Part shown: one piece after another, positions 1,957 to 62,682 of the stretch | Layout of the letters: every line of letters starts with the position of its first letter | How positions within the stretch are numbered: the stretch's first letter is position 1 | Translations under genes and position numbers: made by a program | IMG/VR virus record: IMGVR_UViG_3300026512_000002 | Coordinates: 1 to 64,000 of that record | Strand: one strand, 5' to 3' | Length of the DNA stretch: 64,000 nt | Notes under the pieces: model-generated | What the model was told of the DNA's origin: nothing | What the model saw: only the letters and a program-made list of their open reading frames with translations | Databases searched by the model: none

Positions 1957-2000
1957 AAAATAACACATATTTATTAATAAATATGTGTTATTTTTTTTTT
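1957..2000. terminator. Bidirectional intrinsic terminator
   Basis: Perfect inverted repeat AAAATAACACATATTTATT/AATAAATATGTGTTATTTT plus T-tract, between convergent genes. Confidence 0.75.
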
Positions 2001-4034: not shown

Positions 4035-7000
4035 ATGGTAAGAGAAAAAGTTCGTGGATTAAAAAGGCGTGAAATTCGAGATATTAAACTTTATATTTTA
4101 GCTAAAAAGATTAGTATTGATAAATTATCAAAACTGGTTAATATAAGCAAATATAGATTATCCAAATGTCTTAAATATGGAAACAACAAATTTACAATGT
4201 ATGAAATTTCCAATATTAAAAAAATTATTAATGATAATAACAATGAACAAATGAAAAGTGTGGAATTAAATAATAGTGATTTTTTTAAACAAAATATATC
4301 TGAAGAAATATGGAGAAGTAAATATAAAGCGGTTAAAGATAAAACAGTATTTGATACATTTGATAGGATTATCGGAACATTGTTTGACAATACTGATGAG
4401 TTTGATATAGTTATCGCATCAAAATTACGCAATATGATGCATGAGAACAGATTTTTACCTGCTGGCAGAATATTATCCAATACTGGTGATGACACTAAAC
4501 CTATTGCTAGTTTAATAAATTGTCTTGTTATGGAACAAATACCTGATTCTATGAATGGTATAATGAGTATTGCTAGAGAAGCTGCTTTAAGTCTTCAAAG
4601 AGGAAATGGTGTCGGTTATGACTTTTCATCGATAAGGCCTAAAGGTGCTTATGTAGCTGGTGTTGGTGCGGATACTAGTGGACCATTACCATTTATGGAA
4701 ATATTTAACACTATGGCTAAAACTATAATGTCTGCTGGTGGCAGAAGATCTGCTCAGATGGGAGTTATGGATATACATCATCCCGATATTGTAGATTTTA
4801 TTACATCTAAACAAAAAGAGGGTGTTCTGAAACAATTCAATTTATCTGTCAATATAACTAATGATTTTATGAACCAATTAAAATTATTCCAAAAAACTGG
4901 TGATAAAAAATATGAGTTATGGGAATTGTGGTTTTGGGTTAAATTATCACCAACAGATACTGTTCATAGAAGTAGAGTTAGTGTTATTAATAAAGGTGAA
5001 TTACCATATGATCTTAAACATAGAGATAATAATTATTTTGTATTTGATAAAACTCATATCGAAGTAAAATATGGTAATTGTTCTCATAATACTATTTATG
5101 AGAAAAAAGTTTTTAATATTATTAGAATTACAGAATTATGGGATATTATAATGCGTTCTACTTATGATTATGCTGAGCCTGGAGTATTGTTTTTAGATAG
5201 AGCAAATGAATATAATCTGCTAAAGAATTATGAAAATATTAGAGCTACAAATCCATGTGTTGTTGGGGATACGAAAGTTGCTGTTGTCAATAGAGGGGCT
5301 GTTACTATAAAAGAGCTTGCTGATAAAGGTGAGGATGTTATGGTATATGCATATGATAATGATCTTAACAGAAGAGTTGTTAAAAGAATGAGAAGGCCTA
5401 GATTAACTGGTGAAAATATTGGCGTGTATAAAATATTATTTAATTCTGGAGATAGTATAATAGTTACAGGTAATCATGAAATTTTAATGAGTAATGGTGG
5501 TTATGTTGAAGCTAAAGATTTAGAACGTGGTAGTAGCGTCCATGTGTCACAGATTAATTTTGATAAAACGTCTCATATCGAGTTTAATCCCAATGATTAT
5601 GATATTAAAGTCACTAGAGTTGATGATGAGGATGTTTCGTTTATAGAACGTACTTGTGAGCATTGTGGTAAAAGTTTCTGGGTGAGATATGACGAAAGAG
5701 AAAAAGCATTCTGTTCTGGTAAATGTTCCGATAGTTATACTGAAATTAAAAATGGTTGGAGGAACAATGTTAAATCTAGAGTAGATTATCAAAACATGGG
5801 TACCATGTTCGAATATTTGGTTGTTGATATAGAGTATGTTGGTACTAGAAATGTGTATAATGGTACTGTTGATGATGTTCATAATTTTTATGTTGTATTA
5901 GATGATAGTGATCCTAATAATGTTACTATGCTGAATAATATGCAGTGTGGTGAGCAAATATTACCATTTAATGGTGCTTGTTTATTGGGATCCATGAACC
6001 TTGTTAAGTATATTGATGGTGATAGTTTTAATTTTGCTAATTTTTATAATGATACTATTTTTGCTAATATTTTATTAGATAGGGTGGTTGAACGACATGG
6101 GTTAGCATTAACAGGACAAATTGCTGAAATAACTAGTAAACGAAGGCATGGTTTAGGTTTTACTGGATTAGGATCTATGTTCCATATACTAGGTATTGAT
6201 TATGGCAGTATTGAATCAATAGAAATGACTAGAAATATAAGTATGATTTTAGCATATGGTAGTTTAGTTGCTAATGCTAAGTTATCCAAGATTTCAGGAT
6301 CTTTTAAAATTGATAATATGAATAATTTTATTGAAGAATTTAATAATAGTAAATATTATACTCATCTTATAGATAATATTAAGAGTAGTGGGTTTGGTGA
6401 TCATATTATGAATGTTGATACGTTATTAAATATGGTCAATACATATGGTTTGAGATATTCACATGCTACATCAATAGCGCCTACTGGGACTATAAGTTTG
6501 GTTAGTAATAATGTTTCTAATGGTATAGAACCACCGTTTGCATCAGCATATAGTAGAAATGTTGTTGACGCAAACGATACTAGTATAAGTAAAACTGAAC
6601 GAATTATGGATTATGCATTTATGATGGCTTGGGAAAAATCCAACATGGATTATGATGAATTTCTTAAAGAATATAATATGAGTCATAAATTTGCTCAAGA
6701 TATATCACCTAGTGATCATATTGCTATTCAGGCTGCTGCTCAAGAATTTATTGATTCAAGTATTAGTAAGACTATAAACTGTCCCACTAATATGAAATTT
6801 GAGGATTTTAAAAATATATATTTGGAAGCATATGATAATAATTTGAAAGGTCTGACAACATTTAGGTTTAATCCTGAAGTTAGATCTGCTGTATTAATAA
6901 CAGATGACGATATGATGAATATGAATATAAAGATTATGTTTAAAGATGGTTCTAGTAAAATATATAAAGCTAGTGATCAAGTGGAATATAAAGGAAGAGT

Positions 7001-7037
7001 TGTGACAGCATATAATTTATACGATATGTATAAATAA
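4035..7037 (+). CDS. nrdJ: Adenosylcobalamin-dependent (class II) ribonucleotide reductase, intein-containing, with N-terminal HTH-like extension
   Basis: Motifs FLPAGRIL, SLINC, GxGVGYDFS, RRSAQM, FNLSV, AEPGVLF, ATNP[intein]CGEQ, ACLLGS, SIAPTGTISL, ISKTIN; followed by an NrdJb-type gene. Confidence 0.93.
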   Translation: MVREKVRGLKRREIRDIKLYILAKKISIDKLSKLVNISKYRLSKCLKYGNNKFTMYEISNIKKIINDNNNEQMKSVELNNSDFFKQNISEEIWRSKYKAVKDKTVFDTFDRIIGTLFDNTDEFDIVIASKLRNMMHENRFLPAGRILSNTGDDTKPIASLINCLVMEQIPDSMNGIMSIAREAALSLQRGNGVGYDFSSIRPKGAYVAGVGADTSGPLPFMEIFNTMAKTIMSAGGRRSAQMGVMDIHHPDIVDFITSKQKEGVLKQFNLSVNITNDFMNQLKLFQKTGDKKYELWELWFWVKLSPTDTVHRSRVSVINKGELPYDLKHRDNNYFVFDKTHIEVKYGNCSHNTIYEKKVFNIIRITELWDIIMRSTYDYAEPGVLFLDRANEYNLLKNYENIRATNPCVVGDTKVAVVNRGAVTIKELADKGEDVMVYAYDNDLNRRVVKRMRRPRLTGENIGVYKILFNSGDSIIVTGNHEILMSNGGYVEAKDLERGSSVHVSQINFDKTSHIEFNPNDYDIKVTRVDDEDVSFIERTCEHCGKSFWVRYDEREKAFCSGKCSDSYTEIKNGWRNNVKSRVDYQNMGTMFEYLVVDIEYVGTRNVYNGTVDDVHNFYVVLDDSDPNNVTMLNNMQCGEQILPFNGACLLGSMNLVKYIDGDSFNFANFYNDTIFANILLDRVVERHGLALTGQIAEITSKRRHGLGFTGLGSMFHILGIDYGSIESIEMTRNISMILAYGSLVANAKLSKISGSFKIDNMNNFIEEFNNSKYYTHLIDNIKSSGFGDHIMNVDTLLNMVNTYGLRYSHATSIAPTGTISLVSNNVSNGIEPPFASAYSRNVVDANDTSISKTERIMDYAFMMAWEKSNMDYDEFLKEYNMSHKFAQDISPSDHIAIQAAAQEFIDSSISKTINCPTNMKFEDFKNIYLEAYDNNLKGLTTFRFNPEVRSAVLITDDDMMNMNIKIMFKDGSSKIYKASDQVEYKGRVVTAYNLYDMYK
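5256..5945 (+). mobile_element. Mini-intein (230 aa) at the NP|CGE catalytic site of NrdJ
   Basis: Starts CVVGDT (block A), has VTGNH (block B) and VYNGTVDDVHNF (block F), ends ...NNMQ before Cys+1. No LAGLIDADG/HNH domain visible. Confidence 0.9.
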
Positions 7038-12822: not shown

Positions 12823-13725
12823 ATGACTAATTTAAATCAAAACACATATTCTCGTAAATTAGATCTGTTAAGTATTTTCAACATATGGTACACCCATATA
12901 TTGAAAAACGAAGATGATGTTGATCGTAATTATAGCGTTGATACTTACTGGTCCGATGATTCGGAAGATCTGTTATATAATAAATATAAACATAATATGG
13001 TGTTTTTTATGGAAAGGATGTTAACTGATATTGATTTTGTTGAGATTATTGTTAATGTTTTTAAATTATATGATATAACGTTAAATAATGTAACATTCTA
13101 TTCACCTAATGAGTATAATTATAAAACAGATACTATTATAGTGTCTGTTGAAATGGAAAAAGATATTTATAATAAACCACTTGTGCTTAATGGCGATATG
13201 CGTGAATATGTGCAATATTATATTGATAATATACGTGTAGGTTCTAGGGATGGATATATATCAGTAGAACCATCTGTTGTATCGGATGTTGTTAGAGATG
13301 ATTATGTATATATGTATGCTATTGGTAAAGTTATTTATAACACTTATGGTGATAGGTTTAGAGCTTTAATGGATACTATATATGAACATATGTTATATAT
13401 TAGATCAATTTGCATGTGTTATTGTGAAGATGCGAAAACCGATATATTGTTATCTAATGACGAGTTATTAAGTTCTGATTATGATAAGGAGTATGTTGTT
13501 AGTATATTAAAAGATTGTTCTACTATCAACGACTTTAATGAAGATGGTGACATTATTACATACATAGATATATTTGATGTGAAAACCATGTCTGATGGTA
13601 TATTAGTAGAAGTAGAAGTACATGGTCATAGGATAGATGATGATTATATAACAATGCTTATAATGTCTAGCTTATCAACATTTTGTAAGACTGTTAACCT
13701 ACCTAGTAATCTATCAATAAGGTAA
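12823..13725 (+). CDS. Hypothetical phage protein (SPxEYNYxTD / SRDG motifs)
   Basis: SD GGAGG; early-type motif CATATTAT-N6-G upstream. Confidence 0.75.
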   Translation: MTNLNQNTYSRKLDLLSIFNIWYTHILKNEDDVDRNYSVDTYWSDDSEDLLYNKYKHNMVFFMERMLTDIDFVEIIVNVFKLYDITLNNVTFYSPNEYNYKTDTIIVSVEMEKDIYNKPLVLNGDMREYVQYYIDNIRVGSRDGYISVEPSVVSDVVRDDYVYMYAIGKVIYNTYGDRFRALMDTIYEHMLYIRSICMCYCEDAKTDILLSNDELLSSDYDKEYVVSILKDCSTINDFNEDGDIITYIDIFDVKTMSDGILVEVEVHGHRIDDDYITMLIMSSLSTFCKTVNLPSNLSIR

Positions 13726-13765
13726 AATCGTAATATTGATGATCATAAATATATATTATAATAAT

Positions 13766-14112
13766 AAGTTATTTAATAATGAATCGTGCATTGGCAAGTG
13801 TTTCCGGCGGTTCATAGCATAGAATGCTACTTATAGGAAACAACACACATTTGTGTGTTCCATTGTAAAGTTGTAGCTCTGGTAGGAAGGAGCAGTGAGC
13901 GGACATTGTGTGTCGAAACATGTCGCGGCTCTTGGTAGAAATACCAGCGGTAATCAATCCGTCAGAACACGTAAACATGGCTGACTACCATGATTGCTGG
14001 AGTTGCTATCCTAAAAGCAACTCTTGAGTAAATATATACAACCCTATCTGCGTTTGCGATAGGGTTGTATATCATTAAGAAAAGAGGTTGATCCCCTCTT
14101 TTCTTTTTTTTT
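13766..14112 (+). ncRNA. Putative structured early ncRNA (~350 nt)
   Basis: TATATTAT at 13752; GC-enriched; helices include a perfect 15-bp stem 14034-14048/14058-14072; terminator AAGAAAAGAGG/CCTCTTTTCTT plus T-tract. Confidence 0.65.
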
Positions 14113-14931: not shown

Positions 14932-14958
14932 TATGGGATCGAAAGATCCCATTTTTTT
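14932..14958 (+). terminator. Intrinsic terminator, copy 1 of a 27-bp direct repeat
   Basis: TATGGGATC-GAAA-GATCCCATTTTTTT, identical to 17665-17691. Confidence 0.85.
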
Positions 14959-17664: not shown

Positions 17665-17691
17665 TATGGGATCGAAAGATCCCATTTTTTT
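17665..17691 (+). terminator. Intrinsic terminator, copy 2 of the 27-bp direct repeat
   Basis: Identical to 14932-14958. Confidence 0.85.
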
Positions 17692-18235: not shown

Positions 18236-18328
18236 TGATTAATATATTTAATGTGGTAAAAATGAAAATTCTTTACTAGATGTTACAAAATAGTAGTAAA
18301 ATGATTAATGAATACATATTATAGTTGT

Positions 18329-18672
18329 GTCTGTAGGTTATAATACCATAACTTATGGATAATGGAACCGTTTGCGTGTTCCTCAGCTGTCAAGCTGTCT
18401 TCAATAGGAGGAGATATGAAGAATTTATAGATTAGCGATTCCGGTGGTGAATCGTTAATAAGCTTGAGGTTTGATAATACCTCGTAAAAAAAATATCCGT
18501 ACACTAGGGTGCGGTTCCCTAGAAATTGTTGGTTAAGTGTAAGCGCATACATTTGACCACTTTTCCAATCAGCCAATAGGCATGTGTGTTCTAATATACA
18601 CAGCCTAGCATCTTGCGGTTGATTGTAGAAAAAAGAGAGGTTCTGATGCTACCGTAGTTCTCTTTTTTTTTA
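18329..18672 (+). ncRNA. Putative structured early ncRNA (~345 nt)
   Basis: CATATTAT-N6-G (18315-18329); serial hairpins with G-U pairs on the + strand (TTAGCGATTC/GAATCGTTAA; TGGTTAAGTGTA/TACATTTGACCA); T-tract end; no long ORF. Confidence 0.65.
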
Positions 18673-19357: not shown

Positions 19358-20237
19358 TATGGCGGAAATATTTTACGAAACGTCAATACTATGGGAAAGC
19401 GTATCCCTAAAAAAAACAGGCCGCACTGGCGTACCAGGAACACCAAGTAGAGATCTTGGTCAACAAAAAAATCCGTTTGGCCAACGAAAATGATCCATGT
19501 TGTCTGGGAGTATTAGTATGCTCCATTGAAGGACAGTCTCTGGTGATAATGGCAAAAGGTCGAAAGGCCTGGAAAGAAGACGAAATTCGTAACAATGTCT
19601 AAGATAATGGCATTGGGGTATAAAGGGCGGTGGCCTGGAAGTCCTACGATATAAGTCTTTTTTACATAGGTGTATCTTTGATATATTTATGTAACGCTTT
19701 TTCCGTTCAAATGATGAGAAAAGCTATGCTTAATGGCGAAAGCCAAAAAGTAAGCTTTAAGATCATCAATATTGATCGGGTGAAGCAACTCCTACATAAT
19801 AATGATTGGACAAGTGCCATTGGGCACGAAGATGTCGCAATCATTGTTTCTAAAGAATTGGGAATGGAGGTTAAACATAACCGAATTTCCCATTCTTTAG
19901 AAAAGGAGGATGTCTTGATTTTAAGGCAGTATTTCGGAGGGCGTTTGCCCGAAGGAACTACTACCTTAAATGAAGATCAGCTCAAGTTATTGAGCTGGGT
20001 AGAAATTACTCTTAGCAAGTAATTTCTATTTATCCTTCTAAGCTAACAGTTTAATTCGGTTTGACTAACCGAAGTATATTGTTAGTAGGAGTGGAAACAA
20101 AAAAACCTAATAGGTCGGCCAGGTAGGAATGGCCGTTGACTAGACATAGTCTTAAAGAGAGTTAGTCACTCTCAATATTCCGATCCATCAAAAAAAAACA
20201 CCACCCGTTCTGGGTGGTGTTACTAATCCTTTTTTTT
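19357..20237 (+). other. Highly structured early transcript enclosing acrIII-1 (~320-nt 5' and ~200-nt 3' folded regions)
   Basis: Early promoter, continuous helices, 5'/3' end pairing (19359-19372 with 20174-20188), terminator AACACCACCC/GGGTGGTGTT. Confidence 0.7.
19678..20022 (+). CDS. acrIII-1: AcrIII-1 viral ring nuclease (DUF1874; degrades cA4, anti-type III CRISPR)
   Basis: MIYLCNAFSVQM, SAIGH (catalytic His), NRI, LEKED and GGRLPEG match the SIRV1 gp29/STIV B116 family; TTG start after AGGTG. Confidence 0.9.
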   Translation: MIYLCNAFSVQMMRKAMLNGESQKVSFKIINIDRVKQLLHNNDWTSAIGHEDVAIIVSKELGMEVKHNRISHSLEKEDVLILRQYFGGRLPEGTTTLNEDQLKLLSWVEITLSK

Positions 20238-21800: not shown

Positions 21801-22071
21801 TTTTTAATCAAAAAGGTGTAATCATAAAGAAAAGAAATAAAAAGAAAATATTTTTTAAGAGCGTCTTCGATTAATAAATATCACACATATTATAAAGAAA
21901 CATACATTATTAAAATAATTATACTTTTACTGGTAAATCTTTATAAGAGTTTGAATATTCTTTAGAATCTTTGCTTTTTTTATTAATAAATCTATTTTAT
22001 TATGATTTAAACAATTTCTATTTTTAGTAAATTCTTGTCTGATAATATACTTATTAATTAACTATGATCCT

Positions 22072-22381
22072 AAAAAAAACATCTTACCATATCACATTAT
22101 GTCTAGGTGACATAACATGACTTAGGTTTTTTAGAATAAGAGATTGCTCTCTCGCGGATGATCGATGTTTAGCATCCGTCATGGTTCCTACACCATATTC
22201 TTACATGTTCGACAATTTAAAGGATCATTATGTCAGATGATCCTACCTTTATTGGTTTGCCTTAAGTTGGTTAGACTCAACGTGACTCTAGCTACAATGC
22301 TTATTTCACCCTTTCGGGTAGATATCACGATTAACCCATTACCAATGGGTTTATATTATAGGATAAATAATATACCCTATC
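22072..22381 (-). ncRNA. Putative structured early ncRNA (~310 nt)
   Basis: Minus-strand TATATTAT-N6-G (G at 22381); hairpins ACCCATT/AATGGGT, ACCC-GAAA-GGGT, GGATCAT/ATGATCC, GAGA-GCAA-TCTC; U-tract end. Confidence 0.7.
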
Positions 22382-22473
22382 AATGATATAATATATGTTT
22401 GAATGTATTATATATACGATTTTTTTATTTACTATATTAAACAATTTATTAATGAAACTATGAGGTGTATGAA

Positions 22474-25846: not shown

Positions 25847-27625
25847 ATGGCAATTACACAATTAAGAGGAAATACCCAAATAATGGACAATACGATTATA
25901 TTGGGGAAAATGCAATCAGATTTTTTATCTGGGCAAACATGGAATTTATCATCTGCTAACGATGCTGTTTTAACAGGATTGGGATCACCTACTTCAAACA
26001 ACGATGCTGCTAATAAAGCATATGTTGATGGTTTAGTTGATACTAGTATGAAAGCACCTGATGGATATAGTACTAATGCTGCAGGAGATTACCCAACAGA
26101 TTATAAGGGTACAGGTTTAGTTTCTGAAGGCGACACTTTTTACATTACAAATGTATCTAATGGTACAACTGTTGGTGCAAAAACTGTTAATGTTGGCGAT
26201 TTATTAGTAGCATTAGTTGATACACCGGGCAATACTGATAATAATTGGGTTATCATGGAAACCAATAGAGATCAGGCTACTGAAACAATTAAAGGTGTTG
26301 CTGAAATAGCAACACAAACTGAAGCAGATACTGGTACAAATGATACTAATATAATAACACCTTTGAAATTAGCAACATATTTATCAAATGCTAATATAAG
26401 TTCTATTACAGCATCCAATGGTTTAACTAAAACTGGTAATGATATACAATTAGGTGGTACATTAACTGGTAATGTTAGTGTAGACACACAAGATCATGAT
26501 ATAACTATTGCTAATACGGTTACTGATAATACCGGTACAATAACTTTAGGCGATGATGCTAAAACCAATACTACTGTTATTGATGCTAATACGGCTATAA
26601 ATATAGGTATTGGAACAAGTAGTGGTAATATTTCATTAGCAACTGGTATGAGTGGTAATAATGTTACTATAGGCTCTGCTAGTTCAAGTGGTACTCTTAG
26701 TGTTGAGATGGGTGTTGTGAATGTAGCATCTAGTAACAATTTAGTGCTTAATTCACTTAGTGGGCAAGTTGTACTAGGTAGTGGTAGTAGTACTGCTGTT
26801 ACATTCAACGATAGTGAGGTTGGTGCTGCTGCAACAACTACAGCTATACCTTTTGCAATTACAGATAGTGCTAGTGGGACAGCTGGGAAAATTATAGATG
26901 ATTTTAGAGCAGCATTTACAGATGAAGGTGTTGTAAATGCAATTGTTGCTAACTACAATGCAATTGCATCAAGTTCTACTACAGCATCCAATGGTTTAAC
27001 TAAAACTGGTAATGATATACAATTAGGTGGTACGTTAACTGGCGACACTACAATTGATGTTGTTGGTAACGCTTTTACTATTAATGATGGTTATGGTTTA
27101 GGAACATTTAATGTTGGTGATAACACCAATCCTATGAGATCTACTTTTATAGGTCAATTTAGAGTTCTTAATGATGGTGATAATATTATCTTAAAATCTG
27201 GTGATACTGGTGGTTTAAATAGTGCTGGTGATATCACTTTAAGTGCTATAGGTGCATCAGGTGGTGATGGTAATGTTTTACTAGAAACAGGTGGTGGTAA
27301 TACTATTAAGTTTACAGCTAATTCAAACGATGTTGTATTAGACGCACAACCAGATGGTACTGTTGCATTAGCAGTCGCTACAACACAATATGTTGACACA
27401 GCTGTAGGTGGAACTAAAGTTTTTAATGAGTTACCTACTGTTACAAATGCTTCTACTGATGTAACACTAGCTAATGCTCCAGCAACTAACACACAAGTAG
27501 TATATCTTAATGGTATTGTACAAGCACCTGGTGCTAGTAACGATTATACTGTTTCTGGTACAACTATTACATTTAGTTCAGCTCTTCAAACTGGTGATGT
27601 TGTATTAGTTAATTATTTATATTAA
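25847..27625 (+). CDS. Tail fibre protein
   Basis: DAANKAYVD and ATETIKGVAEIATQTEAD...ITPLKL fibre repeats; duplicated TASNGLTKTGNDIQLGGTLTG; C-terminal VYLNG...DYTVSG domain. Confidence 0.8.
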   Translation: MAITQLRGNTQIMDNTIILGKMQSDFLSGQTWNLSSANDAVLTGLGSPTSNNDAANKAYVDGLVDTSMKAPDGYSTNAAGDYPTDYKGTGLVSEGDTFYITNVSNGTTVGAKTVNVGDLLVALVDTPGNTDNNWVIMETNRDQATETIKGVAEIATQTEADTGTNDTNIITPLKLATYLSNANISSITASNGLTKTGNDIQLGGTLTGNVSVDTQDHDITIANTVTDNTGTITLGDDAKTNTTVIDANTAINIGIGTSSGNISLATGMSGNNVTIGSASSSGTLSVEMGVVNVASSNNLVLNSLSGQVVLGSGSSTAVTFNDSEVGAAATTTAIPFAITDSASGTAGKIIDDFRAAFTDEGVVNAIVANYNAIASSSTTASNGLTKTGNDIQLGGTLTGDTTIDVVGNAFTINDGYGLGTFNVGDNTNPMRSTFIGQFRVLNDGDNIILKSGDTGGLNSAGDITLSAIGASGGDGNVLLETGGGNTIKFTANSNDVVLDAQPDGTVALAVATTQYVDTAVGGTKVFNELPTVTNASTDVTLANAPATNTQVVYLNGIVQAPGASNDYTVSGTTITFSSALQTGDVVLVNYLY

Positions 27626-27657
27626 TAAACAGTCTAAAGTAATACATATATAGAATT

Positions 27658-27687
27658 AAGGGTGGTGTTATATCACCCTTTTTTTTA
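27658..27687 (+). terminator. Intrinsic terminator
   Basis: AAGGGTGGT/ATCACCCTT plus T-tract. Confidence 0.75.
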
Positions 27688-27858
27688 CAACTCCTTATAA
27701 TGATTGATTATAGTTCACTAATCATATTTATTATTAATATTATTTAAATTAATATAACTCATCTTCATATTATATATAATATGTTGTAAAAAAAAGGAAT
27801 TTAAATATGTTAAATTCCTTTAATGTGCAACATATATCACATCCTATCATTTTATAAA

Positions 27859-28131
27859 TTAACCATAATAAATAGTTTCAATATTATAGCTAATGCATGG
27901 CACATCAATCACCATGTTAATCCAATTATTTTTTAGTATGTTATTATATTTAAAATATATAAAATTAAGATGTTTTTCTGTTTTAAAAATAATATTGTCG
28001 TATCGATCCAATATTGTATATTGGGATATTTCATCTAGTATTGTTGTTTTACGGCTTGGTACTTTGACCAATTTTAAGAACTCTGTTTTTTTAATAATGT
28101 ACATAGATTTCCTATTTCTGATTTGGAACAT
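27859..28131 (-). CDS. Hypothetical protein
   Basis: 90-aa ORF overlapping the end of the upstream gene. Confidence 0.5.
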   Translation of the reverse strand: MFQIRNRKSMYIIKKTEFLKLVKVPSRKTTILDEISQYTILDRYDNIIFKTEKHLNFIYFKYNNILKNNWINMVIDVPCISYNIETIYYG

Positions 28132-28441
28132 AGTATTCTATGTAATCGGCACCATCTGTGATAGCAGTGTTTGCAATATCTAATATGGTAGATATATCGT
28201 CATCATTATCATAAACCTTAAACAGCGTAGATTCATGTGATAATAATCTGAATATACCGATTTGGTATCCAGTGTCTCCATATATTGAAACTCTAACTAA
28301 TTCGCCATCTTTATCACTATATCTAAATTCTAATATATTTGAATATTCGAGTGTGAATTTATCAAATAACATTGCTAATTCTTCATCGTTTATATATGCG
28401 ATAGACATCATTTCCATTGTATTGATTATTTCATTTCTCAT
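28112..28441 (-). CDS. Hypothetical acidic protein
   Basis: SD GGAGG; 109 aa. Confidence 0.75.
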   Translation of the reverse strand: MRNEIINTMEMMSIAYINDEELAMLFDKFTLEYSNILEFRYSDKDGELVRVSIYGDTGYQIGIFRLLSHESTLFKVYDNDDDISTILDIANTAITDGADYIEYYVPNQK

Positions 28442-28706
28442 TTTCCCTCCGTTAAAAAAGATTTATTTGTAACTATATGTTATCAATCATATTAATTAGT
28501 CACATATATGTAACTTGGCAAGTTTACATTGTCATACTAAATGTCTCCCACAATATATGTAGAGGTTATCAGTTTGTAAAAATTTATTATAGTTTGTTAA
28601 TGAATATGATACATGATTATAGAAATAATATGTAATTAATTAATATATAAAATTATACTATCATTAGTCTATAATAGCATAATAGCTATATTTAAACATA
28701 TATTAA

Positions 28707-29373
28707 GGTGTTGTAGTAGGACATATATACGAGGTGATCGTTTTATATGATCCGTAAATGTTTGAGCATGATAGTCAACGATCATGTTAATTTACAACTA
28801 CAAACATCTATCTAAAGCCAGCATAGATGTAAAACTTAATGCTGGGTAGACGTAATAGTTCCATTGGGGAGTGATTTACGCTAAGTTCGGATAGAAGGTT
28901 GGATTATGAGTTGTGTGTTACGCAATGAATATGAAAACTAGGAATATGAACTTAAGGCACCTCATGAGTATAACTTCTCATAATTGGTGTTTGAATATAC
29001 TGGATACTAGAGAAAAGTGTCCAGTATGTGGTGAAACCACCACTTGTTTAGCCGTAATGGTTACTCAAGAAGGTGGTCTAACCACTTCACTTAAAGAGGA
29101 GTGCCCTAGTTGTTTTAAAAAAAGAACTGGGTCTTCTTTAAGCGAAGTTATAACACTAGACTATTGGGATATAGTCTAGTATCACCAATATGACCAACAG
29201 TCTATAATGGTCATAGAACGCTTAATTCCGGCAACTAATAGGGATTCGCAGTAATAGGCGTTAGTGGTAACACCACAAAGGAGCTATAAGAAATAGCTGA
29301 TGATGAGTCTACTTGTCTGTAGTGGATAATTCAAAGGGAAGCAGTTGATCAACTATTCCCATTTCTTTTTTTT
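28707..29373 (+). ncRNA. Large structured early RNA (~660 nt), possibly carrying a Zn-ribbon ORF
   Basis: TATATTAA-N6-G (28699-28713); many helices (28997-29008/29016-29027; ACTAGACTAT/ATAGTCTAGT; CTTAAAGAGGA/TCTTCTTTAAG); terminator GGGAA..TTCCC plus T-tract. Confidence 0.7.
28946..29179 (+). CDS. Possible small Zn-ribbon protein embedded in structured RNA
   Basis: KCPVCGE...ECPSCFKK paired CxxC motifs; start codon uncertain. Confidence 0.45.
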   Translation: MNLRHLMSITSHNWCLNILDTREKCPVCGETTTCLAVMVTQEGGLTTSLKEECPSCFKKRTGSSLSEVITLDYWDIV

Positions 29374-29591
29374 TATTATATATAATAAAAATTGTATGGT
29401 AAAATATTTTATAATAGCATGGAATTAGATAAAAAACATACAAATCTCTAAAGTACAAATATTAGGATTGTGTAAAGAATATTGTTGAAAATCGTAATAG
29501 TTTAATGTTCGATTACATATTAGTTATATGATTGTAATTGTGCAATCAACGTGCGAGCGTTACTCGTTGAATTTTTTTTAAAGGAGGAATT

Positions 29592-29714
29592 ATGAAATAT
29601 TCTGATTTTAAAAAAAGACTGGCAGAAATGTCAGCCTTAGAGAAATCCATTTACTTAACTGCGTCACTGCAGTCAAGTAAATGGATTTCTATTCATCTAA
29701 AATATTTTAGATGA
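29592..29714 (+). CDS. 40-aa small protein (MKYSDFKKRLAEMSALEKSIYLTASLQSSKWISIHLKYFR), absent from the ORF track
   Basis: Strong SD AAGGAGG; own early motif (29516) and terminator (29720-29744). Confidence 0.6.
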   Translation: MKYSDFKKRLAEMSALEKSIYLTASLQSSKWISIHLKYFR

Positions 29715-29814
29715 ATAGAGGGGGGTAACCCCCATTTTTTTTTTCGCATTCACTATATAATAATTGTGTTTTCATAGAAAGTTATTAACCAATTAATTAA
29801 AAAAAAATCTTTTA

Positions 29815-31290
29815 CTATAATGCTTCTTTTATAGTTATCCATGTCTTACTATTACCAATAACCGGTGATTGTATATCATCATCTTTAATAACAAATAGCT
29901 CTATATAGTCTCCACTAGATAAGTTAACATATATTCCAGATGCATTAGCAACACCTTCTTTGTCATAGTTATATCCTCTAGTATAAGTTGCACCATTTGA
30001 ATAATCCAAAACAACCCCATTTTTTTTTATGTATGTAACTATTGTATTTCTAGCATTATCACCAGAATCCAATAACATATGTACACTATAATCGATCCAT
30101 ACATTCATATTCCTATTAGCAGTTATTCTACCAGCACCACTTCTAGTGAAATCGGCATGTGATTTTATATCAGTATTGAATACAACAACGGCTTCTGTTC
30201 CAGATGGTGTTTGAGTATTGTTTTTACCATAACTAACGGATATTGGTTTAGTAGGTATAATTACACTTATATCAACCACACCGCTGCCCGCATCTGTAAC
30301 TATTATATCATTTACAAAATTCAATGTTCCGTGTGGTGTGTTTGGTATATTAGAACCTTCTTGTTGAACAGTTATCGTTGCTCCAGCACCATCCGAACCT
30401 TTCTTAGACATCAAGTTCCAACCTGTACCAGGACTTGATGGTGATCCAGGATTATTAGTATTATTGTTTATGATTGAAACAAATGATGAACCTTGATATT
30501 CTACAGCCATATTTTCATCATAACCGTTTCCCGAATTAAAATTGGAGTCCCATGTACCTTCCCATGTCACATCGCCATCAGCACCAGTATCTCCTTTAGG
30601 TCCTTGTGGCCCAATATCACCTTTACTACCCTTACCACCTACATTGATTACAATTAAATTATATGTGTCGGTTTCAAGTGTTGCGCTGCCAATATATCGG
30701 ATTGTTTGTATTTTTAATTTATACCCTATATTCAAACTTAATATTGCAAAATTGGAACCAGTGTTCTCGTCACTATTGTCCTGTCGATGGTATAAACCTA
30801 TTTTGAAATTATCGACATCAACATAACCACTACCATCATCTATTTGTAAGTATACTTCTGAACCACTTCTAGATGTTGATGATCCATTTATCTGATTAGA
30901 TGCTGAAAGCATAACAACATAGTTACCGTTTTCATTACATGTTACTTCGCCAGTACTGGTGTTTAGTGTAAATTTATCACTTGTTGTACGTTCAGTATCT
31001 AATAAAATATCGATTCTGGTGTTTGTGAATGTTTGTATCGTGGATGGATATACATTATACATGACAAATGATTCGGATTTCCAATTAGCCGATAAATGTG
31101 GAGCATTAGATAGATCACCTTCAACTCCACCACTTATATTAGCTTGAGCTATAAATATTTTATTTTGCCAAGCAACTTTATCACCTGTATTATAATTAAC
31201 AGTTTCATCATAAAATCCAAGATCTTGAACAAAAGACGCTCCTGTTAAATTACCGTTTAATAATTGCTCTTTTCTTATTTGCATAACCAT
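29815..31290 (-). CDS. Fibre protein with CBM-like, collagen-like and C1q/TNF-like domains
   Basis: YDETVNYNTGDKVAW; GxKGD/GPQGPKGD collagen triplets; two C1q-like beta domains (LSSGDYIELF). Confidence 0.75.
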   Translation of the reverse strand: MVMQIRKEQLLNGNLTGASFVQDLGFYDETVNYNTGDKVAWQNKIFIAQANISGGVEGDLSNAPHLSANWKSESFVMYNVYPSTIQTFTNTRIDILLDTERTTSDKFTLNTSTGEVTCNENGNYVVMLSASNQINGSSTSRSGSEVYLQIDDGSGYVDVDNFKIGLYHRQDNSDENTGSNFAILSLNIGYKLKIQTIRYIGSATLETDTYNLIVINVGGKGSKGDIGPQGPKGDTGADGDVTWEGTWDSNFNSGNGYDENMAVEYQGSSFVSIINNNTNNPGSPSSPGTGWNLMSKKGSDGAGATITVQQEGSNIPNTPHGTLNFVNDIIVTDAGSGVVDISVIIPTKPISVSYGKNNTQTPSGTEAVVVFNTDIKSHADFTRSGAGRITANRNMNVWIDYSVHMLLDSGDNARNTIVTYIKKNGVVLDYSNGATYTRGYNYDKEGVANASGIYVNLSSGDYIELFVIKDDDIQSPVIGNSKTWITIKEAL

Positions 31291-31365
31291 ATTACAATCC
31301 TTATAGTAATCATAAAAAAAATCAATGTATGATACACATACATATTAATATGTAGACTTATTAGT

Positions 31366-32148
31366 CTAGTTTAAACTAGTACCGTTTAACATTTTAGAAT
31401 TCAATATGTTTAATTGTACTGGAACGGCAGGTGCTAAACCAGTGTCTTCGACACAAGTTATAAAGATAGCCCAAGTACCACTTATTGGAGTAATAGATCC
31501 TAAGTCTAATTCAATCATATTGGTATTAATGTCTTTTACATTATCTATACCAATATGGTTACCAGCATTATCTCTGATAGAAACGCTTGTGATATTATTA
31601 AGAGCTTTAAGATTGTGTTGTATTGTTAATTTACCACTATTTAAATCAGTATTGCTAAATGTTGTCGTATAACTAACACTACCAGCCCCTGAACCATAGC
31701 CTTTTTTACCAATATATTTGTAAAAAGTTATCTTAGGTGGCATGTTACCTGGATTGCCTGAATAAAAATATAATAACCCAGTAGCGTTGTCGACAACCCA
31801 ATCGCCTTGACCAAAAAAAATCTGATTATTAGAATTATCTCTTAACGTATAATTATATGATCCATCACCAAAATTGAAAGGTATTGAGTCTACTAAATCA
31901 GCTAGGTAAAATGCATCAGTTGTACCTGGTACAGATATCATTGTTTTATTCTCAAAGTATTGAACAATACCTAGTGTCTCACCGTCATTCAATATGGGTG
32001 CTGTTGTAGGTATTAAATCTTTTTGAACCCATTCTAGTGGACGGTAACCATATGGTTCTTCAAAAAAAGCTCTATTTATATCTGTTTCACCAACACCCAT
32101 TAATTTTTTAAATAAATTACTAGCTCTTTGATTTGTAGTTAATGCCAT
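31366..32148 (-). CDS. Virion structural protein
   Basis: DWVVDNATGLLYF...ITFYKYIGKKG pattern; upstream of fibre gene; SD GGAG. Confidence 0.6.
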   Translation of the reverse strand: MALTTNQRASNLFKKLMGVGETDINRAFFEEPYGYRPLEWVQKDLIPTTAPILNDGETLGIVQYFENKTMISVPGTTDAFYLADLVDSIPFNFGDGSYNYTLRDNSNNQIFFGQGDWVVDNATGLLYFYSGNPGNMPPKITFYKYIGKKGYGSGAGSVSYTTTFSNTDLNSGKLTIQHNLKALNNITSVSIRDNAGNHIGIDNVKDINTNMIELDLGSITPISGTWAIFITCVEDTGLAPAVPVQLNILNSKMLNGTSLN

Positions 32149-32287
32149 TTGTAACTCCAATATTAATTATGAATTGTTTCTTTAATAAATTGTTATCGTA
32201 TAACATCAAGGAATATGTTAAACTATTAATAATGTCTGTAACAATATGTTATTGTCATTCAACCATATCGTTTTAAAGGAGTTTGTT

Positions 32288-32608
32288 ATGGAAAAAGAAA
32301 ATGTTGAAAAAAATAAAACCATTATAACTGTTTGTAAGGATACTGATACTAAAGAGTATTTAGTAAAAAATAAACATGTTAACAATATTGTAAAAACACC
32401 ATATATTGCAATAGTTGGAACACTACATCATATATGGTCACATATAGGTGGAAACACCAATCATGCTAAAACTCATATTGCTGTTAATATTTTTTCAAAA
32501 ATAGTGCTCAACTTATATAATAATACACATGTTAATATTGATATTGATGAGGCTATTAATGGTTTTAAAAAAGATATTAGAAAAATGCTAGATAACAAAT
32601 CTAAGTAG
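32288..32608 (+). CDS. Hypothetical protein
   Basis: SD AAGGAG before ATG 32288. Confidence 0.7.
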   Translation: MEKENVEKNKTIITVCKDTDTKEYLVKNKHVNNIVKTPYIAIVGTLHHIWSHIGGNTNHAKTHIAVNIFSKIVLNLYNNTHVNIDIDEAINGFKKDIRKMLDNKSK

Positions 32609-43360: not shown

Positions 43361-43981
43361 ATGGGCAAGAAAAAAAACAGTACGAAAAAAACAATTGAAG
43401 AAATTTTCGCAGAACTTAAAGAACTCAGTTTCAATGAAAAAATTAAAATAACTATTACCGAAATGGGACAAGAAAAACCTTTAAAAGAATTAATATCTTT
43501 GCTACCGAATATATTCGGTAGCAAAATAGTTAAAGGTGGTTTATTCACTATAAAAAATAGAGTGAACAAATTAAAAATAAATACATTGGTACCAATATTA
43601 AGTGAACAGTTAAATCCTGGTGGTACAATTTTTGTATATTATTTAAAATCTACAAATAAACTTATGTTATTTGCTAATGGCCTAGATGCAGAACTATCTA
43701 AAGATAATGCAATATATAAATATTATGATATTACGAGCGATTTAAATATACCCGAATATATTATATTTATGGGTTTATTCGGAGACACTTTTAATGAAAA
43801 CGAAATATTGAGTTTACAACACAAATATAGCAATTATTTAAATTTGACTAAATCAGGTAATTCTCATATGCTTAAAATGACACCAGTAAAATATAAAGAA
43901 TTTATTACCGAGTTAGGTAGAAGTTTAAGTAGTCCAAAATATATAAAAATAATAGTAAGAGAAAAGAACGCTTTTGAATAA
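43361..43981 (+). CDS. Hypothetical early protein
   Basis: SD AGGAG; TATATTAT-N6-G upstream. Confidence 0.75.
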   Translation: MGKKKNSTKKTIEEIFAELKELSFNEKIKITITEMGQEKPLKELISLLPNIFGSKIVKGGLFTIKNRVNKLKINTLVPILSEQLNPGGTIFVYYLKSTNKLMLFANGLDAELSKDNAIYKYYDITSDLNIPEYIIFMGLFGDTFNENEILSLQHKYSNYLNLTKSGNSHMLKMTPVKYKEFITELGRSLSSPKYIKIIVREKNAFE

Positions 43982-62459: not shown

Positions 62460-62625
62460 ATTATGACTCCACTTGTACTGAAATTAATGTTGGTTAAAAA
62501 AATATGTAAACTGAAATATCTTTTAGTAACATATTAATGTAGTGTTTATGGCTACTTGTTAATTTAATCTAAGAGGATTGAATAAGTAGGTGAAAGTAAT
62601 GGTTAGTAAATTTGAGACATGTATT

Positions 62626-62652
62626 AATATATATATATATATATATATATAT
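62626..62652. repeat. (AT)n microsatellite
   Basis: About 13 AT units within a palindromic context upstream of 62683. Confidence 0.85.
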
Positions 62653-62682
62653 TAATACACTTATTCAGTTAAAGGAGTTAAA

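What the first reader, a model, noticed from the sequence alone, without database searches (positions are those of the whole stretch)
29530..29744. 40-codon gene built largely from near-perfect inverted repeats
Seen: early motif, SD AAGGAGG, ORF 29592-29714 and terminator. The CDS holds CTGGCA-GAAA-TGTCAG, a 16-bp perfect stem extended by 5 bp (29641-29690), and a 32-nt perfect palindrome across the stop codon (29688-29719) that overlaps the first stem by 3 nt. Inference: either a very stable small mRNA or a dsRNA/cruciform element. The pure Watson-Crick stems do not indicate whether it acts as RNA or as DNA.
Basis: seen in the sequence. Interest (0 to 1): 0.6.

Follow-up and report, generated by a model that had tools for sequence, protein, structure and literature searches.

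The report
Hairpin-packed small RNA unit, huge phage
A 215-base self-contained transcription unit in a 228-kb uncultured phage holds the most tightly folding stretch of the whole genome, carries a strong ribosome-binding site with a 40-codon frame, and shares a rare promoter with at least two other small structured-RNA units. Its function is untested and no relative was found.

Summary
SD AAGGAGG (29581-87), ATG 29592, stop 29712-14, three stacked inverted repeats and a GGGGG-GTAA-CCCCC/T10 terminator are all present. Window 29641-29760 folds more strongly than any of the other 3,792 120-nt windows of the 228-kb genome, on both strands. New context: a two-box motif, AAAATCGTAATA-N17-ATATTA (29488-29522), occurs exactly three times in the genome. 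Each copy is on the + strand, in front of a strongly structured, GC-richer small unit that ends in a terminator. The most likely reading is an autonomous, nuclease-resistant small RNA of about 215 nt, with a hairpin at its 5' end, a ribosome-loading site and stacked hairpins at its 3' end. Whether the 40-aa basic peptide matters is open. The RBS matches those of real genes, and the frame is open more often than chance (p about 0.085). Against this, codon usage in the hairpin part is not gene-like, and a sister unit has the same kind of RBS with only four codons. No homologue, Rfam family or conserved copy exists, and relatives of the neighbouring tail-fibre gene lack the module. No expression data could be obtained. 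It is a new member of a known kind and moderately interesting.

The parts
29488..29499 (+). Upstream promoter box AAAATCGTAATA (-35-like)
   Evidence: The exact 12-mer occurs only at genome 13724, 29488 and 108831, all on the + strand. About 0.3 copies are expected by hand calculation from base composition.
29517..29522 (+). Downstream promoter box ATATTA (-10-like), exactly 17 nt after the first box
   Evidence: All three exact copies have the same spacing and hexamer. In the window there are 4 matches with up to 2 mismatches against 0.06 expected.
29530..29547 (+). Hairpin at the inferred 5' end (7 bp, loop ATTG, one U.G pair valid only on the + strand)
   Evidence: Folds. The transcript start is inferred as about 7 nt after the -10-like box. 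Units 1 and 3 also start with a hairpin.
29553..29579 (+). Small leader hairpin GCGAG-CGTTA-CTCGT plus T8 tract (weak attenuator or U-rich translation enhancer)
   Evidence: The terminator scan flags it. Unit 3 has the same plan of small hairpin, then U-rich tract, then SD.
29581..29587 (+). Shine-Dalgarno AAGGAGG, 4 nt before the ATG
   Evidence: There are only 18 AAGGAGG in the genome, counting both strands. About 9-10 of them are followed at 4-7 nt by an ORF of 160 aa or more, with the same spacing as here at two of these.
29592..29714 (+). 40-codon ORF (basic peptide, pI 9.9, no membrane-spanning segment)
   Evidence: It stays open in 8.5% of shuffles that keep the hairpin architecture. 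Its codon score is 0.03, against 0.34 for genes and -0.08 for spurious ORFs.
29619..29634 (+). Hairpin 1, 6 bp with GAAA loop and one G.U pair valid only on the + strand
   Evidence: It is disrupted on the - strand.
29641..29690 (.). Hairpin 2, 22-nt arms with one mismatch (A.C on +, U.G on -) and a 6-nt loop
   Evidence: The arms are unique in the genome.
29688..29719 (.). Hairpin 3, a perfect 32-nt palindrome spanning the stop codon
29720..29744 (+). Intrinsic terminator GGGGG-GTAA-CCCCC plus T10
   Evidence: On the - strand the T tract is absent.
13724..14112 (+). Sister unit 1: the same exact promoter boxes, an RNA of about 345 nt with no SD-led ORF, a long hairpin (14034-14072) and a terminator (14077-14105 plus a T run)
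   Evidence: Fold z = -5.6.
18287..18672 (+). Sister unit 4: promoter variant with 2 mismatches, a structured RNA of about 345 nt, and GGAGG plus ATG followed by only 3 sense codons (18416-18430)
   Evidence: Fold z = -6.8.

Best explanation
Positions 29488-29744 are a self-contained small transcription unit on the + strand of an AT-rich (28% GC) 228-kb phage.

A phage-specific two-box promoter (AAAATCGTAATA-N17-ATATTA) would start an RNA near 29530, and the GGGGG/CCCCC-T10 terminator would end it at about 29744. The inverted repeats act as RNA secondary structure.
- A hairpin sits at the very 5' end.
- A U-tract plus consensus SD/AUG loads ribosomes.
- Three back-to-back near-perfect hairpins are stacked directly on the terminator hairpin.

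Together these would make a compact small RNA of about 215 nt that resists exonucleases. The unit is one of at least three driven by the same promoter boxes, so it probably belongs to one co-regulated set of structured small RNAs.

Ribosome binding at the SD is likely real. The RNA is therefore either a small, highly stabilised mRNA or a dual-function RNA. I put the chance that the 40-aa peptide itself is a selected product at about 0.4-0.45.

Shown: the sequence features, their statistical excess, and the recurrence of the promoter boxes.
Inferred: the transcript start, transcription itself, stability, translation and any target.
For: - Fold z = -10.6. The locus ranks first of 3,793 genome windows on both strands.
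- A canonical + strand terminator is present, with no T tract on the - strand.
- The promoter boxes are exact at only three sites, all + strand, all upstream of top-ranked structured regions. In the window: 4 matches with up to 2 mismatches against 0.06 expected.
- Units 2 and 3 share the leader plan of 5' hairpin, small hairpin, U-rich tract, SD, ATG.
- G.U pairs valid only on the + strand occur in three stems of this unit and in the long stems of unit 3.
- AAGGAGG is rare, and at this spacing it precedes real genes.
- The frame is open through the hairpins in only 8.5% of architecture-preserving shuffles.
- The first 16 codons score like genes, 0.26.
- Precedent for a ribosome bound at a strong SD protecting an RNA from 5' exonuclease: B. 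subtilis hbs, PMC5737220.
Against:
- The promoter and the transcript start rest on motif recurrence only. No sigma factor was detected in the genome.
- The two large stems are pure Watson-Crick. Their single mismatch is a wobble on the - strand, and the - strand fold is slightly more stable. RNA-level selection on the + strand is therefore not shown for them.
- No homologue exists, so covariation cannot be tested.
- Codon usage of the hairpin part is not gene-like, -0.12.
- Sister unit 4 has GGAGG plus ATG with only 3 sense codons, and unit 1 has no SD-led ORF. An SD in these units therefore need not mean a protein.
Confidence: 0.5

Rival explanations
1. It is an ordinary small protein gene. 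The 40-aa basic peptide (pI 9.9) is the selected product, and the hairpins only tune mRNA half-life or the rate of translation.
For: - The SD, spacing and ATG match those of real genes.
- The unit has its own promoter-like motif and terminator.
- The frame is open at p about 0.085.
- The N-terminal codons are gene-like.
- Sister unit 3 has an SD-led 73-codon ORF with a coding-like GC1>GC2>GC3 gradient, and the source's own annotation calls it as a gene.
Against: - The whole-ORF codon score is 0.03. That is 1.8 sd below small genes and 2.5 sd below all genes, and 27% of spurious ORFs score as high.
- There is no GC-position gradient.
- 73% of the CDS is locked in stems.
- No Pfam, PHROG, word-search or exhaustive HMMER relative was found.
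- The language-model recognition score is low.
- Units 1 and 4 show that this promoter class drives RNAs without a meaningful ORF.

The protein databases cannot see this ORF: it is not called as a gene even in its own record.
Confidence: 0.25
2. It is a hairpin stack serving convergent transcription. It would act as a two-way terminator, insulator and 3'-end protector between the + strand unit and the - strand 491-aa tail-fibre gene, which ends at 29815. The ORF would be incidental.
For: - The fibre gene has no canonical - strand terminator of its own in 27500-32500.
- The stack folds slightly better on the - strand, where hairpin 2 is fully paired.
- On the - strand, the reverse complement of hairpin 1 is followed by TCTTTTTTT (29616-29610).
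- Tandem long hairpins are common at gene boundaries in this genome.
Against: - This does not explain the consensus SD/ATG or the recurrent promoter boxes aimed into the stack.
- Hairpin 1 is broken on the - strand.
- There is no U tract after the GC hairpin on the - strand.
- Relatives of the fibre gene do without any such module.
Confidence: 0.15
3. It is a DNA-level element: a cruciform, a binding site for a symmetric protein, or a scar of an inversion or recombination event in a variable region.
For: - The 32-nt palindrome is perfect, with an AT-rich centre, and the 16-bp stem is purely Watson-Crick.
- The DNA fold gives z = -10.
- The region is lineage-specific. The fibre gene lies in the opposite orientation to the patatin gene here, but in the same orientation in a relative.
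Against: - The arms are unique in the genome, with no repeated half-sites.
- A self-complementary 4-nt loop is unremarkable in AT-rich sequence (hand estimate, about 0.1).
- The element is framed by RNA signals (promoter boxes, SD, terminator), and the flanking small stems need G.U pairs.
- No reverse transcriptase is present, so there is no DGR or retron.
Confidence: 0.06

Closest known systems
Dual-function small RNAs (S. aureus RNAIII/hld, B. subtilis SR1/SR1P, E. coli SgrS/SgrT). From general knowledge, not tested here.
   Same: An independent promoter and terminator, an RNA of a few hundred nt with stable hairpins, and a short RBS-led ORF embedded in the structured RNA.
   Different: There is no sequence or Rfam relation. 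No base-pairing target is known. Here most of the ORF lies inside near-perfect stems of 16-22 bp. Expression is unproven.
Type I toxin mRNAs of Firmicute prophages (bsrG/SR4, txpA/RatA, fst). From general knowledge.
   Same: A small ORF on a highly structured, stable mRNA, lying 3'-to-3' with a convergent gene so that overlapping antisense transcripts are possible.
   Different: The peptide is hydrophilic and basic with no membrane helix: the maximum Kyte-Doolittle value over 19 residues is 0.39. No antitoxin RNA gene was identified.
PeSL promoter/stem-loop cassettes of T4-like phages (PMC2839356, PMC4122927)
   Same: A small ORFan unit with its own promoter and stem-loop terminator, in a variable region that relatives lack.
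   Different: PeSLs are conserved composite repeats that flank cassettes and mediate recombination. Here only the two promoter boxes recur, and the stem-loop sequences are unique.
Ribosome/SD-mediated 5' stabilisers of Gram-positive mRNAs (hbs, STAB-SD; PMC5737220)
   Same: A strong SD of the AAAGGAGG type close to the 5' end of a structured RNA could block 5'-to-3' decay. Sister unit 4 has such a site with almost no ORF.
   Different: Here a proper ATG and 40 open codons follow. The host and its RNases are unknown.
RNase III processing hairpins of phage T7 early RNA. From general knowledge.
   Same: Hairpin 2 offers about 22 bp of dsRNA, the minimum substrate length. Cleavage would leave a 3' hairpin-protected RNA.
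   Different: T7 sites have internal loops and lie between genes, not inside an ORF. Cleavage was not tested.
SPO1 late promoters, CGTTAGA(N17-19)GATATT (as cited in PMC3601020)
   Same: CGTAATA ... (T/C)ATATT matches 5 of 7 and 5 of 6 positions, which suggests a phage-specific sigma-type promoter class.
   Different: The spacer is 16 nt when aligned this way. No sigma-70 region 2 or region 4 domain was detectable in the genome. This is a lead only.

Membership tests
Intrinsic (Rho-independent) terminator | A short G+C-rich stem-loop followed directly by a U tract, at the end of a transcription unit | tested here: met
   5 G-C pairs, loop GTAA and T10 at 29720-29744 on the + strand.
Any curated RNA family (Rfam 15) | Score at or above the family's gathering threshold | tested here: not met
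   No hit at gathering thresholds in the window. The best sub-threshold hit is STnc400, 32 bits against 80. Sister loci give none at E<=0.1.
Protein-coding gene with known relatives | A significant match to a protein family or to any homologous protein | tested here: not met
   Pfam and PHROGs: none. Word search: none. Exhaustive phmmer over 1.84 billion representatives: none. A degenerate N-terminus scan of metagenome contigs gave only chance hits. The ORF is not called as a gene in its own record, so the databases are blind to it.
Type I toxin-antitoxin | A small hydrophobic, membrane-inserting peptide | tested here: not met
   Maximum Kyte-Doolittle value over 19 residues is 0.39, GRAVY -0.34, net charge +4.6.
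Type I toxin-antitoxin | An overlapping or adjacent antisense RNA gene | tested here: inconclusive
   A sigma-70-like site lies on the - strand at 29634-29605 (10 of 12). Such sites are near chance level in this region, 47 found against 37 expected.
Dual-function sRNA | Its own promoter and terminator plus an RBS-led short ORF in a structured RNA | tested here: met
   In silico only.
Dual-function sRNA | Demonstrated transcript, translation and a base-pairing target | not testable with these tools
The host is unknown.
PeSL cassette (T4-like phages) | A conserved composite promoter plus stem-loop repeat flanking the cassette | tested here: not met
   The promoter boxes recur, but the stem-loop arms are unique and the units share no other sequence.
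DGR or retron | A reverse transcriptase gene in the element or genome | tested here: not met
   No RVT_1 match in the 228-kb record. The same search hits 3 control genomes.
RNase III substrate | About 20 bp or more of continuous dsRNA | tested here: met
   Hairpin 2 has 22-nt arms with one mismatch. Cleavage itself is not testable here.
Dispersed palindromic repeat, MITE or operator set | Several copies or half-sites in the genome | tested here: not met
   The arms occur only at this locus, even with 3-5 mismatches allowed.

The most novel reading that the evidence does not exclude
This huge phage may encode a promoter-defined set of at least three to five ultra-structured small RNAs. The candidates are units at 13.7, 18.3, 22.4, 29.5 and 108.9 kb. 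Two of them would be translated through near-perfect dsRNA stems. They would act as RNA effectors, for example dsRNA or ribosome decoys, anti-defence RNAs, or riboregulators of late genes such as the convergent tail fibre. The ORF40 unit, with a coaxial dsRNA rod of about 40 bp, would be the extreme member. This would be a class of phage RNA with no Rfam counterpart.
Probability: 0.18. Interest if true: 0.7.

Novelty: new member of a known kind. Interest (0 to 1): 0.42.

Why it matters
Small RNAs and micro-proteins of huge uncultured phages are almost unexplored. Gene callers skip them: this ORF is absent even from its own record's annotation.

The useful outcome is a concrete, testable handle. 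A rare two-box promoter marks a handful of compact, extremely structured RNAs in one genome. If they are transcribed, they form a co-regulated RNA set whose stability elements can be dissected one by one: the hairpin at the 5' end, the ribosome-loading site and the stacked 3' hairpins. The 40-codon frame offers a clean test of whether a peptide can be selected while about 70% of its codons are tied up in perfect stems. If they are not transcribed, the locus is just an elaborate boundary between convergent genes.

Tried and rejected
- **Near-identical or related DNA.** Megablast against phage records gave nothing. An exact hairpin-arm scan of IMG/VR gave nothing.
- **Related loci through neighbouring genes in IMG/VR.** These gave nothing, or only distant relatives at 39% identity or less.
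- **Exact-protein look-ups.** They found only identical copies of the same phage in ENA and Logan assemblies, with no variation to analyse.
- **Homologues of the fibre protein.** Matches at 70-41% identity were found, and four contigs were read. None has the module.
- **Relatives' records.** Four of the five were not held, so they could not be searched for the promoter pattern.
- **Promoter pattern in IMG/VR.** There were three hits. I read two: one is inside a gene, and the other is a promoter-like site that overlaps a terminator. The third was not inspected. No homologous unit was seen.
- **Degenerate back-translation of the first nine residues in metagenome contigs.** Only unrelated proteins that happen to share the N-terminus came up.
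- **Peptide searches.** All were empty: Pfam, PHROGs, word search, exhaustive phmmer and ESM Atlas.
- **Paralogue of the peptide in the genome.** None was found.
- **Rfam.** Nothing.
- **DGR or retron idea.** Rejected because there is no reverse transcriptase.
- **Sigma factor for the promoter class.** Not found.
- **Sequence similarity among the units.** None beyond the T runs.
- **The look-up of sequencing runs.** No expression evidence exists.
- **Genome-wide fold scan.** Two attempts timed out before a coarser one succeeded.
- **Not run.** Neither would separate the hypotheses without an alignment.

Full report
**Setting.** The window is the first 64 kb of a 227,696-bp IMG/VR virus record (28% GC, CheckV 89% complete). 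Its large proteins place it as a distant relative of metagenomic huge phages. Genes use Shine-Dalgarno sites. The finding lies in a 1.37-kb gene-poor gap (28442-29814) inside a tail-fibre module. A 592-aa fibre gene lies upstream on the + strand, two small genes lie on the - strand, and a 491-aa fibre gene on the - strand ends at 29815.

**Observation.**
- There is one correction. Hairpin 1 contains a G.T, and the single mismatch of hairpin 2 is A.C on the + strand but U.G on the - strand.
- The RNA fold of 29530-29750 is -86.5 kcal/mol, z = -10.6. The - strand gives z = -8.1, and the DNA fold gives z = -10.0.
- In a scan of 3,793 windows of 120 nt, corrected for GC, 29641-29760 ranks first on both strands, with residuals of -5.9 sd (+) and -6.8 sd (-).
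- Long perfect hairpins are a habit of this genome. There are 56 with 11 bp or more, against about 5 expected by my hand calculation, and many of the longest lie between genes. The locus is the extreme case of a common feature, with two of the longest stems abutting each other and a terminator.

**A promoter that defines a set.** Comparing the upstream region with the rest of the genome turned up the 12-mer AAAATCGTAATA.
- It occurs exactly three times, at 13724, 29488 and 108831. All copies are on the + strand, and each is followed after exactly 17 nt by ATATTA. The next best candidates have two or more mismatches.
- In the window there are 4 matches with up to 2 mismatches against 0.06 expected.
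- All three exact sites precede regions that rank among the most structured in the genome.
  - Unit 1 (about 13765-14112) folds at z = -5.6 and has no SD-led ORF. It ends with a 15-bp hairpin and a terminator.
  - Unit 3 (about 108872-109297) folds at z = -15.1. It has TTGGAGG, then 5 nt, then ATG and a 73-codon ORF. That ORF runs through 20- and 22-bp hairpins and stops in the 3' arm of one of them.
- Two variants of the boxes precede further structured RNAs, at 18287 (+, z = -6.8) and 22423 (-, z = -5.4).
- The units share no sequence beyond the boxes and the T runs.
- A start about 7 nt after the second box falls at 29529-29532.
- Units 2 and 3 share a leader plan: 5' hairpin, small hairpin, U-rich tract, SD, ATG.
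- The boxes resemble the SPO1 late promoter consensus cited in PMC3601020. No sigma domain was found in the genome, so this stays a lead.

**RNA or DNA, and which strand.**
- The promoter boxes, the SD and the T10 terminator all point to a + strand RNA.
- The three small stems of the unit each need a G.U pair that exists only in + strand RNA. The long stems of unit 3 carry several such pairs.
- The two big stems of this unit are pure Watson-Crick and fold marginally better on the - strand. This fits either a young structure or a need for perfect dsRNA. It also leaves room for a second role on the convergent fibre transcript, which has no canonical terminator of its own.
- The arms are unique in the genome, which argues against operators or dispersed repeats.
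- No reverse transcriptase is present.

**Coding or not.**
- *For coding.*
  - AAGGAGG occurs 18 times in the genome, counting both strands. About 9-10 of these are followed at 4-7 nt by an ORF of 160 aa or more, and two of them have the same 4-nt spacing.
  - The frame stays open for 40 codons in only 8.5% of shuffles that keep the hairpin architecture.
  - The first 16 codons score like genes.
  - ORF73 of unit 3 has a coding-like GC gradient.
- *Against coding.*
  - The codon score of the whole ORF is 0.03, against 0.34 +/- 0.13 for genes and -0.08 +/- 0.17 for spurious ORFs. The hairpin part scores -0.12.
  - There is no GC-position gradient.
  - 73% of the ORF lies in stems.
  - Unit 4 has GGAGG, 4 nt and ATG, then only three sense codons. 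A strong SD in these units may therefore serve to load a ribosome as a 5' stabiliser, as shown for B. subtilis hbs (PMC5737220).
- *Uninformative.* The peptide (pI 9.9, no membrane helix) has no relative in any search. However, the ORF is not called as a gene even in its own record, so this absence says little.
- I leave coding at roughly even odds.

**Conservation.**
- No close relative of the phage exists in the collections.
- The only other copies are 100% identical contigs.
- Fibre homologues at 70, 55, 50 and 41% identity are followed directly by co-directional genes and lack the module. The gap is therefore lineage-specific.
- It also holds one copy of a 700-bp element (28671-29373) whose second copy lies at 114690-115463 on the - strand. 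That repeat explains why other assemblies break at 28703-28830. The second copy has no hairpin module after it, so the two features are neighbours and not one element.

**Verdict.**
- The best reading (0.5) is an autonomous, highly stabilised small RNA, one of a promoter-defined set. Ribosomes probably load on it, and the peptide is of uncertain importance.
- The rivals are a plain small protein gene (0.25), a boundary structure for convergent transcription with an incidental ORF (0.15), and a DNA-level palindrome (0.06).
- Nothing could be learned about expression.

Noticed in passing
window 28671-29373; second copy at genome 114690-115463 (- strand; L016 2691-3464): A two-copy element of about 700 bp that is GC-richer than the genome (37-40% against 28%). 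The 5' 300 nt are 99.7% identical, and the 3' 180 nt, including a terminator, are 84% identical. The centre differs. Both copies share the first 19 codons of an ORF and then diverge: copy A gives 88 aa (or 71 aa) with CxxC..CxxC, copy B gives 121 aa. There is no Rfam, Pfam or PHROG match and no IMG/VR hit.
   Followed up: partly
window 13724-14112, 18287-18672, 22070-22423 (-); genome 108831-109297 (L024 332-798): Further small, strongly structured, GC-richer units sit behind the same or a similar two-box motif, with fold z from -5.4 to -15.1. None matches Rfam. Unit 3 carries a 73-aa Cys-rich ORFan, and unit 4 carries a 3-residue mini-ORF behind a perfect SD.
   Followed up: partly
window 28703, 28814 and 28830: Independent assemblies of the same phage (Logan SRR7968125, ENA ERZ27262656) end their contigs here, inside the 300-bp repeat.
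   Followed up: partly
genome 68913-68975 (L025 914-976): The 17-nt ribosome-binding string of ORF40 (TAAAGGAGGAATTATGA) recurs exactly in front of a 15-codon ORF. That ORF is followed by a terminator at the end of an operon.
   Followed up: no
window 26398-26469 and 26971-27042: A 72-bp internal direct repeat, 97% identical, lies inside the 592-aa tail-fibre gene.
   Followed up: no
window 14933-14952 and 17666-17685: The identical 20-nt terminator hairpin ATGGGATCGAAAGATCCCAT is used after two different genes.
   Followed up: no
window 1957-1994, 43498-43525, 62620-62659: Other perfect zero-loop palindromes of 38 and 28 nt, and a 40-nt palindrome built around an (AT)n run.
   Followed up: no
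window 19800-20230: Another cluster of highly structured windows (z about -4 to -4.9 on both strands) overlaps the end of a 130-aa GTG ORF. A strong - strand terminator lies at 20221-20197.
   Followed up: no
window 4035-7037: A ribonucleotide reductase large-subunit gene of 1000 aa. About 900 of its residues align to about 600 profile positions, which suggests a large insertion.
   Followed up: no
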